Source: Mobula hypostoma (Eukaryota). Taken from it: a DNA stretch of 64,000 nt. Below, piece by piece: positions 1 through 1,121 of the stretch. The notes beneath the pieces are model-generated. The model had not been told where the DNA came from. It did no database searches and was given only the letters and a program-made list of their open reading frames with translations. Made by a program: the position numbers and the translations under genes. Positions within the stretch are counted from its first letter, which is position 1. Every line of letters starts with the position of its first letter. The stretch lies in contig NC_086126.1 of the NCBI RefSeq assembly GCF_963921235.1, positions 18,662,001-18,726,000 of the forward strand. Reading direction: 5' to 3'.

Positions 1-283
1 TTTTGTAAATTCGCATCCACGCCAAATTAAAGAGAAGATATTCAAAACGGAAATCACTTGTCACATTCTTGCAGACTGAAACGGAATGATCAATAATTAC
101 CCAAATTAACATTGTTCCCTGCAGTCGGGAATGCCGTCAACCGTGTCGTGAGAATGTCAAGTTGTGGATTTATTTATCTTGCACGATGATGTGAACGAAA
201 CATCCGGACTCCTTGATCGGAAAATGACACAAAGAGACTCGGTGAGGTCAATAAATCAGCCACTTGCCATAGAGGACATTGGG

Positions 284-1121
284 GGTCTGGGTCTAGTGTT
301 GTGGCCACCTGCCAGCAGAGGGCAGAGAGGAGCTGGGTCTTGTGTTAGAGCCACCAGCCACCGGAGGGCAGAGAGGAGCTGGGTCTTGTGTTAGAGCCAC
401 CAGCCACCGGAGGGCAGAGAGGAGCTGGGTCTTGTGTTGTAGCCACCTGCCACCAGAGGGCAGAGAGGAGCTGGGTCTTGTGTTAGAGGCACCAGCCACC
501 AGAGGGCAGAGAGGAGCTGGGTCTTGCGTTATAGCCACCAGCCACCAGAGGGCAGAGAGGAGCTGGGTCTTGTGTTATAGCCACCAGCCACCAGAGGGCA
601 GAGAGGAGCTGGGTCTTGTGTTATAGCCACCAGCCACCAGAGGGCAGAGAGGAGCTGGGTCTTGTGTTAGAGCCACCAGCCACCAGAGGGCACCGAGGAG
701 CTGGGTCTTGTGTTATAGCCACCAGCCACCAGAGGGCACCGAGGAGCTGGGTCTTGTGTTATAGCCACCAGCCACCAGAGGGCAGAGAGGAGCTGGGTCT
801 TGTGTTATAGCCACCAGCCACCAGAGGGCAGAGAGGAGCTGGGTCTTGTGTTAGAGCCACCAGCCACCAGAGGGCACCGAGGAGCTGGGTCTTGTGTTAT
901 AGCCACCAGCCACCAGAGGGCACCGAGGAGCTGGGTCTTGTGTTATAGCCACCAGCCACCAGAGGGCACCGAGGAGCTGGGTCTTGTGTTATAGCCACCA
1001 GCCACCGGAGGGCACCGAGGAGCTGGGTCTTGTGTTATAGCCACCAGCCACCAGAGGGCACCGAGGAGCTGGGTCTTGTGTTATAGCCACCAGCCACCAG
1101 AGGGCACCGAGGAGCTGGGTC
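284..1121 (+). repeat. 46-bp minisatellite, ~18 copies, each with a CTCF-core-like motif (GCCACCAGAGGGCA)
   Basis: Unit GAGCTGGGTCTTGTGTTATAGCCACCAGCCACCAGAGGGCAGAGAG (variant ...GGGCACCGAG) is repeated head-to-tail with no unique spacers. A degenerate copy lies at ~257-283. Confidence 0.97.

What the first reader, a model, noticed from the sequence alone, without database searches (positions are those of the whole stretch)
257..1121. Minisatellite made of ~18 co-oriented CTCF-like sites pointing toward the histone cluster
Seen in sequence: every 46-bp unit contains GCCACCAGAGGGCAG or GCCACCAGAGGGCAC (first unit GCCAGCAGAGGGCAG; three units CCACCGGAGGGCA), all on the same strand. Established: this closely fits the vertebrate CTCF core CCASYAGRKGGCRS, and clustered co-oriented CTCF sites act as strong cohesin barriers (for example Pcdh clusters and the Igh 3' CBE array). 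Inference: a VNTR whose copy number sets insulator strength could be a tunable boundary for the histone/ZNF domain. The 46-bp period would leave room for one CTCF footprint per unit.
Basis: partly seen in the sequence, partly recalled or inferred. Interest (0 to 1): 0.72.

Follow-up and report, generated by a model that had tools for sequence, protein, structure and literature searches.

The report
Minisatellite of 18 CTCF-type motifs
A devil-ray minisatellite repeats a strong, same-direction match to the binding motif of the genome-folding protein CTCF 18 times, but nothing available here shows that CTCF binds it or that it fences off the histone genes 19 kb away.

Summary
A 46-bp x 18.2 tandem array lies at 287-1121, with 96% unit identity and a decayed extra unit at about 257-277.

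- **Motif strength:** Every unit has a + strand CTCF-type core. 15 of 18 match CCASYAGRKGGCRS exactly and 3 are one mismatch off.
- **Chance:** Shuffled units reach the consensus unit's score in 2.5e-5 of trials.
- **Direction:** The motif points right, toward H4 (19784), H3, H1, H2A and H2B.

- The array is 18.7 kb from the nearest histone gene, across transposon debris and a promoter-like island.
- The window holds no ZNF cluster.
- The units lack the upstream (ZF9-11) motif typical of insulator-class sites.
- The motif is not better conserved than the rest of the unit.
- Binding, insulation, copy-number variation and genome-wide distribution could not be tested.

Mild support for a real bound site: both flanks keep CpG (o/e about 1.0 against a window median of 0.40), and a separate opposite-strand CTCF-like site lies 1 kb away.

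This is a new member of a known kind (mouse DXPas34, DXZ4). The scan earlier noted another CTCF-motif minisatellite in this genome, at SRP72.

The parts
257..286 (+). Decayed partial unit at the left edge. AGCCACTTGCCATAGAGGACA at 257-277 resembles the motif half of the unit but scores below 8 bits as a CTCF site.
   Evidence: Sequence. The in-register comparison is (17 of 46 without gaps); my hand alignment with one gap gives about 17 of 22. It is not in the list of hits of 8 bits or more.
287..1121 (+). The minisatellite: 18 full 46-bp units plus 7 bp of a nineteenth. Consensus CTGGGTCTTGTGTTATAGCCACCAGCCACCAGAGGGCAGAGAGGAG. GC 0.61, CpG o/e 0.16. The left-hand units are the most diverged and the right-hand units the most uniform.
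309..1109 (+). 18 CTCF-type sites of 19 bp each, starting at 309 and every 46 bp after it. Scores are 16.3-23.2 bits. The GA-to-CC variant in 9 units (9, 10, 13-18) raises the score to 23.2 (18.7 in unit 16). The A-to-G variant in units 2, 3 and 16 lowers it by about 4.5 bits.
1..286 (.). Left flank that keeps its CpG: 13 CpG, o/e 1.05 at GC 0.42. The window ends here, so what lies further left is unknown.
   Evidence: The window median o/e is 0.40, and 9.6% of 286-bp windows reach 0.9.
1122..1700 (.). Right flank that keeps its CpG: o/e 0.95 at 1122-1400 and 0.73 at 1401-1700.
2083..2101 (-). Independent single CTCF-like site on the opposite strand, ATTACAGTAGGTGGCGCTA, 15.3 bits, p 2.6e-6. 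It contains a retained CpG and lies about 1 kb right of the array.
   Evidence: About 0.01 sites this strong are expected within 1 kb on either side (4000 positions x 2.6e-6; my arithmetic).

Best explanation
This is an intergenic minisatellite that grew in place, by slippage or unequal exchange, from a single CTCF-like sequence. It now offers 18 head-to-tail, core-only, high-scoring CTCF motifs at 46-bp spacing.

The most likely working, which is inferred and not shown, is as follows:
1. CTCF occupies part of the array in at least some tissues.
2. This keeps the array and its immediate flanks unmethylated.
3. Because all sites point right, the array preferentially stalls cohesin that arrives from the right-hand side, where the histone genes lie.

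It would then be a one-directional multi-site loop anchor. The tie to the histone cluster is one of position only, and tuning of its strength by copy number is possible but unshown.

Shown here: the array, the motif quality, the orientation, the CpG-retaining flanks and a second site nearby. Inferred: binding, cohesin stalling and any effect on genes.
For: - **Array and motif:**
- **Against a chance motif:** a shuffled unit reaches 20.84 bits in 2.5e-5 of 200,000 trials, and no random 46-mer out of 100,000 from the window does.
- **Methylation:** the commonest core, CCACCAGAGGGCA, has no CpG. By general knowledge this means DNA methylation should not block binding.
- **Flanks:** they keep CpG at o/e 1.05 and 0.95. 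In this window such values are otherwise seen mainly at histone genes and promoter-like islands.
- **Second site:** an independent opposite-strand site of 15.3 bits lies 1 kb away, where about 0.01 is expected.
- **CTCF in batoids:** CTCF motifs of this matrix sit in ATAC peaks at skate domain boundaries and point inward (PMC10115646).
- **Spacing:** closely spaced motifs give double footprints (PMC4562119).
- **Number of sites:** the authors of PMC12885311 cite work in which more sites give more insulation; PMC7087399 is titled and abstracted on tandem CTCF sites acting as insulators (abstract only).
- **Same core elsewhere:** the 15-mer CCACCAGAGGGCACC was used as 'the CTCF motif' in a transgene study (bioRxiv 10.1101/336156).
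- **Growth in place:** there is a gradient from the decayed edge unit, through unit 1 with 5 differences, to near-identical right-hand units. Units 8-10 and 12-14 also share the same variant pattern.
Against: - There are no binding, accessibility or contact data for this species.
- The units lack the upstream ZF9-11 motif. The best match is 5 of 10 at a 9-bp linker, outside the usual 2-7 bp (the same paper also mentions about 8 bp). That motif is reported in most insulator and barrier sites.
- Motif columns are no better conserved than the others: 3 of 14 core columns vary against 8 of 32 outside.
- Three units carry a score-lowering change.
- 835 bp of tightly packed sites leave no room for positioned nucleosomes. 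The array is therefore either largely open or largely wrapped and silent.
- The CpG-rich flanks could simply be young sequence.
Confidence: 0.45

Rival explanations
1. An inert minisatellite. It is an ordinary GC-rich hypervariable repeat whose unit happens to spell a CTCF core. It is wrapped in nucleosomes or heterochromatin, is not occupied, and has no effect on folding or genes.
For: - The motif is not preferentially conserved within the unit.
- There is no upstream motif.
- The array sits in transposon debris, far from any called gene.
- The unit's 3' half, GGGCAGAGAGGAG, resembles the G-rich cores of classical minisatellites (my own knowledge, not tested).
- With tens of thousands of minisatellites per genome, a 2.5e-5 chance per GC-rich unit allows a few chance cases. 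The genome-wide count is my inference.
Against: - The score is near the top of the scale in all 18 units.
- Both flanks retain CpG.
- A second independent site lies 1 kb away.
- Another CTCF-motif minisatellite has already been noted in the roughly 77 Mb of this genome scanned so far (note s1-141945, unchecked). That is more than my rough chance estimate for that amount of DNA.
Confidence: 0.3
2. The array is the dedicated boundary of the histone (and ZNF) domain, and its copy number sets the insulator strength.
For: - The orientation faces the histone genes.
- A weak opposite-strand site (12.7 bits) lies at 32354, just beyond the first H2B.
- Stronger insulation with more sites is reported in mammals.
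Against: - The array is 18.7 kb from H4, with a promoter-like island and transposon fragments between.
- The histone genes continue to 39.8 kb, beyond the weak site at 32354. That site's score is what chance gives in 128 kb (about 1.3 expected at p 1e-5).
- There is no ZNF cluster.
- No such array lies within 10 kb of H2A in two paralogous clusters, though the equivalent position was out of reach.
- Copy-number variation is untested.
Confidence: 0.1
3. A promoter-proximal or enhancer-type platform for a gene or transcript that starts just outside the window's left end or beside the array. This would resemble the SRP72 promoter array noted elsewhere in this genome, rather than an insulator.
For: - Clustered, closely spaced CTCF motifs associate with active promoters and enhancers more than single sites do (PMC4562119).
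- The CpG-retaining DNA runs to the very edge of the window.
Against: - No coding exon, Pfam hit or called gene lies within 1-19.7 kb.
- The array itself is CpG-poor (o/e 0.16), unlike a CpG-island promoter.
- The DNA to the left is unknown.
Confidence: 0.1
4. A docking array for some other sequence-specific zinc-finger protein (a PRDM9-type or lineage-specific factor) whose site overlaps the CTCF-like core, for example marking a recombination hotspot that also drives the repeat's turnover.
For: Turnover appears polar, with the edge units diverged and the right-hand end uniform. Hotspot-driven minisatellites behave this way (my own knowledge).
Against: Nothing specific points to another factor, and the match to CTCF is far better than needed for a chance overlap.
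Confidence: 0.05

Closest known systems
Mouse DXPas34 minisatellite at the Tsix 5' end
   Same: Both are short-unit minisatellites (34 bp there, 46 bp here) in which each monomer contains a CTCF binding site. DXPas34 arose by local amplification, and its CTCF-site number differs between related species (PMC3149622).
   Different: DXPas34 is CpG-rich, methylation-regulated and tied to X-inactivation choice, with CTCF binding shown by experiment. The ray array is CpG-poor, lies in intergenic transposon debris, and has no binding data.
DXZ4, FIRRE and ICCE macrosatellites, and the human 1q23.3 tRNA tandem repeat
   Same: These are tandem arrays with a co-oriented CTCF site in every unit. The orientation of Dxz4 controls long-range contacts, and copy number varies (PMC5899087, PMC6125249, PMC4041453; abstracts only).
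   Different: Their units are kilobases long (3 kb, 7.3 kb), so sites are far apart and nucleosomes fit between them. Here the sites are 46 bp apart and the whole array is 0.8 kb.
Clustered (2xCTS) and tandem CTCF sites at mammalian promoters and boundaries
   Same: These are several same-direction motifs tens of bp apart, jointly occupied and seen as double footprints. The paper on tandem CTCF sites describes them as insulators (PMC4562119; PMC7087399, abstract only).
   Different: Those clusters have 2 to a few diverged sites that are conserved between species. Here there are 18 near-identical copies of recent origin, and their conservation is unknown.
SRP72 promoter array in the same genome (scan note s1-141945)
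   Same: As reported in that note, it is a minisatellite of about 44-bp units, each with a strong co-oriented CTCF-type site, in the same devil-ray genome.
   Different: That array is described as a 9.5-kb CpG-island promoter directly upstream of a start codon, with a shorter version in elephant shark. This one is 0.8 kb, CpG-poor and not next to any recognised gene. I could not fetch that array, so the two units were not compared.

Membership tests
Vertebrate CTCF binding site (core motif class, JASPAR MA0139.1) | Match to the 14-19 bp core consensus or matrix | tested here: met
   15 of 18 units match CCASYAGRKGGCRS exactly and 3 have one mismatch.
Vertebrate CTCF binding site (core motif class, JASPAR MA0139.1) | CTCF occupancy in cells (ChIP, CUT&Tag or footprint) | not testable with these tools
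Vertebrate CTCF binding site (core motif class, JASPAR MA0139.1) | The host species has CTCF with the vertebrate DNA specificity | not tested
   The ray's own CTCF was not examined. A related batoid, the little skate, shows MA0139.1 motifs in ATAC peaks at boundaries with an orientation bias (PMC10115646).
Insulator-class CTCF site (core plus upstream ZF9-11 motif) | Upstream CTGCAGTTCC- or CAGCTGTTCC-like motif 2-7 bp 5' of the core (the same paper also mentions about 8 bp) | tested here: not met
   The best match is 5 of 10 at a 9-bp linker. The motif definition and spacing come from PMC12885311.
Tandem-repeat CTCF platform (DXPas34 or DXZ4 type) | Tandem array with one co-oriented CTCF motif per unit | tested here: met
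Tandem-repeat CTCF platform (DXPas34 or DXZ4 type) | Copy number varies between alleles or individuals (VNTR) | not testable with these tools
Only internal signs of recent turnover are seen.
Domain boundary or insulator | Drop in contacts across the element, or a loop anchor in Hi-C | not testable with these tools
   No contact data were available.
Domain boundary or insulator | Cluster of sites with both orientations at the boundary | tested here: inconclusive
   One opposite-strand site lies at 2083-2101 (15.3 bits). The arrangement is convergent over 1 kb, not the divergent pattern described for skate boundaries.
Domain boundary or insulator | Lies between differently organised or regulated domains | tested here: inconclusive
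   Only 286 bp lie to the left of the array in the window. No called gene allowed a walk leftwards.
Transposon-borne CTCF site expansion (SINE B2 type) | The unit recurs as dispersed copies | tested here: inconclusive
   No other copy of the unit (10 or fewer substitutions) or of its flanks was found in the 64 kb, nor in 40 kb of two paralogous clusters. The rest of the genome could not be searched.

The most novel reading that the evidence does not exclude
Devil-ray (perhaps batoid) genomes multiply CTCF sites by minisatellite expansion rather than by SINE spread. This would give a class of direction-uniform, densely packed CTCF arrays (this one, and the SRP72 promoter array) that are bound in cells. 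Their copy number would differ between individuals, providing a natural series of alleles of loop-anchor strength.
Probability: 0.12. Interest if true: 0.7.

Novelty: new member of a known kind. Interest (0 to 1): 0.35.

Why it matters
If CTCF does bind this array, it is an 18-site, single-direction cohesin barrier packed into 0.8 kb. That makes it a compact natural test of how the number and spacing of sites set barrier strength. Together with the SRP72 array, it would hint that tandem amplification is a way cartilaginous fishes create CTCF sites. If CTCF does not bind, the array is a useful warning that near-perfect motif matches in repeats need not be functional. Nothing here changes what is known about CTCF or about histone-cluster regulation.

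Tried and rejected
- **DNA left of the window, or the same array in other assemblies:** four ORFs near the array were looked up by exact product and none is on record.
- **Histone genes as handles:**
  - H2B, H2A and H3 located the window on GCA_963921235.1 OY992623.1. They revealed two paralogous clusters.
  - No gene is called between window 1 and H4, so the 10-kb flank limit never reaches the array or its equivalents.
  - The H4 look-up returned only unrelated species. Loci L005-L016 and L018 were not analysed; L017 is this window's own DNA. None was taken for human.
- **tRNA relics beside the array:** by eye, 1340-1404 and 1565-1633 (minus strand) look tRNA-like. ARAGORN and Rfam at E up to 10 do not support this, so it is not used as evidence.
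- **Link between the two 46-bp arrays in the window:** they share no sequence.
- **Classical CpG island, G-quadruplex runs, hairpins:** the array is CpG-poor, has no canonical G4 pattern and has no inverted repeats.
- **Large protein search with the array's reading frames:** not run. The array ORF is not among this genome's called genes, so a blank would have meant nothing and the search is costly.
- **Earlier scan notes:** a search by sequence gave nothing.

Full report
**What is there.** Tandem Repeats Finder finds one array at 287-1121: period 46, 18.2 copies, 96% matches, no indels. The units read in register have the consensus CTGGGTCTTGTGTTATAGCCACCAGCCACCAGAGGGCAGAGAGGAG.
- Eleven of the 46 columns vary.
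- Unit 1 is the most diverged (5 differences). Units 2-5 carry one or two changes each. Units 6-18 differ almost only by a GA/CC pair at columns 39-40.
- Just left of the array, 257-277 (AGCCACTTGCCATAGAGGACA) is a decayed copy of the motif half of the unit.
- Units 8-10 and 12-14 share the same variant pattern.
- The gradient and these repeated blocks are what an array shows when it grows and homogenises in place, with the right-hand end the most recently turned over.

**Is the CTCF likeness real?** Yes, as far as sequence can say.
- The strict consensus CCASYAGRKGGCRS matches 15 units on the + strand and nothing else in the 64 kb on either strand.
- With one mismatch there are 20 matches, 18 of them the units, against 0.86 expected.
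The matrix is therefore approximate, though its column sums and consensus TGGCCACCAGGGGGCGCTA look right.
- The CC variant, present in 9 units, raises the score to 23.2 bits (18.7 in unit 16). The A-to-G change in units 2, 3 and 16 lowers it by about 4.5 bits.
- Shuffling the unit's letters gives a site as good as the consensus unit in 2.5e-5 of 200,000 trials. None of 100,000 random 46-mers from the window reaches it.
- The little-skate genome paper used the same matrix with a score threshold of 8. It found such motifs in ATAC peaks at domain boundaries, pointing inward (PMC10115646). So the motif is meaningful in batoids.
- The 15-mer CCACCAGAGGGCACC of the CC units is identical to part of an oligonucleotide used as 'the CTCF motif' in a transgene study (10.1101/336156).

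**Where it lies.** The window is GCA_963921235.1, record OY992623.1, starting at about 18,661,998. Earlier scan notes name the species as the lesser devil ray.
- To the right of the array come unique DNA with a LINE tail, LINE reverse-transcriptase fragments (4.9-6.5 kb) and a promoter-like CpG island (about 7.35-7.8 kb). Further CpG-dense patches and Tc1-like fragments follow.
- The histone genes then follow: H4 19784-20095 (+), H3 20764-21174 (+), H1 near 22.1-22.5 kb (-), H2A 29493-29873 (-), H2B 30769-31140 (-) and a second H2B at 39367-39774 (-). Two histone 3' stem-loops accompany them.
- The array is therefore 18.7 kb from the nearest histone gene.
- No ZNF cluster is present; only one C2H2-like stretch exists, at 34861.
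- Only 286 bp lie to the left of the array. What the array would separate the histone genes from is unknown.

**Evidence bearing on function.** In favour of a real, occupied site:
- The commonest core contains no CpG, so by general knowledge methylation should not block binding.
- The array itself is CpG-poor by design of its unit (o/e 0.16). Both immediate flanks, however, keep CpG at o/e 1.05 (1-286) and 0.95 (1122-1400). The window median is 0.40, and only 9.6% of windows of that size reach 0.9. Most of those are histone genes and promoter-like islands. This is the mark of DNA left unmethylated in the germ line, although young sequence would look the same.
- A separate CTCF-like site of 15.3 bits lies on the opposite strand at 2083-2101 and has a retained CpG inside it. 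About 0.01 such sites are expected within 1 kb on either side.
- Closely spaced motifs can be occupied together. Double DNase footprints are reported for 30-40 bp linkers and 33-58 bp spaces (PMC4562119). The linker here is about 27 bp, at the tight end of that range.

Against, or neutral:
- The units have no upstream ZF9-11 motif. The best match is 5 of 10, at a 9-bp linker.
- That motif occurs in 13-15% of all sites but in most sites with shown insulator or barrier activity. Mutating it abolished enhancer blocking at the IL3 insulator (PMC12885311).
- Within the array the core columns vary as often as the rest: 3 of 14 against 8 of 32. So there is no sign of selection on the motif, though homogenisation makes this a weak test.
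- The other CTCF-like hits in the window are no more than chance gives. This includes the 12.7-bit opposite-strand site at 32354, which could be read as a partner beyond the first H2B. The histone genes also run on past it to 39.8 kb.

**Paralogues.**
- The H2A protein is encoded at three places on the same chromosome (16.37, 18.49 and 18.68 Mb), with the same gene order.
- In the 20 kb fetched around each there is no copy of the unit and no array of CTCF motifs.
- These loci stop short of the place equivalent to the array, which lies about 18 kb beyond H4. No called gene allowed a further step. This is therefore only a weak point against a fixed link with histone clusters.
- By contrast, the window's other 46-bp minisatellite (31803-32133, upstream of H2B) is unrelated in sequence. 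It is present at all three clusters with 5, 6 and at least 16 copies. It belongs to the duplicated unit and shows how fast copy number changes here.

**What it most likely is.** It is a minisatellite that expanded from a single CTCF-like sequence and now presents 18 strong, core-only, same-direction sites.
- I put about 0.45 on the reading that CTCF occupies it in some tissues. It would then act as a one-directional multi-site cohesin stall facing right.
- I put 0.3 on it being an unoccupied repeat.
- I put 0.1 on a promoter or enhancer-type platform for something just outside the window.
- I put 0.05 on another zinc-finger protein.

**Comparison with what is known.** Tandem repeats carrying one CTCF site per unit are established.
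- DXPas34 is a 34-bp-unit minisatellite in which each monomer holds a CTCF site (PMC3149622).
- DXZ4, FIRRE and ICCE are macrosatellites, and human 1q23.3 has a tRNA tandem repeat of the same kind (abstracts only).
- The present array meets the structural definition of such platforms. None of the functional features could be tested.
- It fails the one tested feature of insulator-class sites, the upstream motif.
- The scan has already noted one other CTCF-motif minisatellite in this genome, at the SRP72 promoter (s1-141945). I could not fetch it to compare the units.

**Limits.** No eukaryotic genome search was available beyond exact-protein look-ups. Loci L005-L016 and L018 from other species were fetched by the H4 and H3 look-ups but not analysed; L017 is this window's own DNA. 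None was taken for human.

Noticed in passing
window 31803-32133; L002 about 7810-8040, L003 about 7302-8038, L004 about 7796-8072: A second 46-bp minisatellite lies about 0.7 kb upstream of the H2B start and is unrelated in sequence to the CTCF array. It recurs at the same spot in all three paralogous histone clusters of this chromosome, with 5, 6 and at least 16 copies. It is part of the duplicated histone unit and is variable in copy number.
   Followed up: partly
window 2083-2101 (minus strand): A single CTCF-like site, ATTACAGTAGGTGGCGCTA (15.3 bits), with a retained CpG. It lies in a mildly CpG-rich patch about 1 kb right of the array and faces it.
   Followed up: partly
window 1-286 and 1122-1700: Low-GC DNA (0.41-0.42) that keeps CpG at the expected frequency (o/e 0.95-1.05), unlike most of the window (median 0.40).
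   Followed up: partly
window about 1340-1404 and 1565-1633 (minus strand): By eye these resemble decayed tRNA genes (Asn-like and Ser-like, judged from memory). ARAGORN and Rfam, even at E up to 10, report no tRNA here, so this is unconfirmed.
   Followed up: partly
window 7350-7800: A promoter-like CpG island with CRE-like, E-box, GC-box and CCAAT-like motifs and no recognisable gene.
   Followed up: no
window 9040-9220: A long, nearly perfect palindrome (arms of about 80 nt around a short centre), probably a hairpin-forming repeat element.
   Followed up: no
window 10350-11100: A very CpG-dense patch (up to 33 CpG in 300 bp, o/e 1.1-1.3) with internal short repeats and no ORF or RNA-family match.
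   Followed up: no
window 32354-32372 (-), 36519-36537 (+); L003 2851 (-): Weak CTCF-like hits that share the core GGAACACC(A/G)GAGGGAG. They look like copies of one dispersed repeat rather than independent sites.
   Followed up: no
window 22083-22544 (minus strand): The linker-histone gene is called as 152 aa in the public collection. The simple ORF from the first ATG (22179-22541) ends after 120 aa, and a lysine-rich tandem repeat (22152-22210) lies in another frame. This may be a frameshift or a different gene model.
   Followed up: no
OY992623.1 at 16.37, 18.49 and 18.68 Mb (L002, L003, L004): Three paralogous histone clusters with the same H2B-H2B-H2A(-H1-H3-H4) order lie on one chromosome. 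The exact H3 protein of this window (with T in place of the usual A in KSAPATGG) occurs in only one of them.
   Followed up: partly
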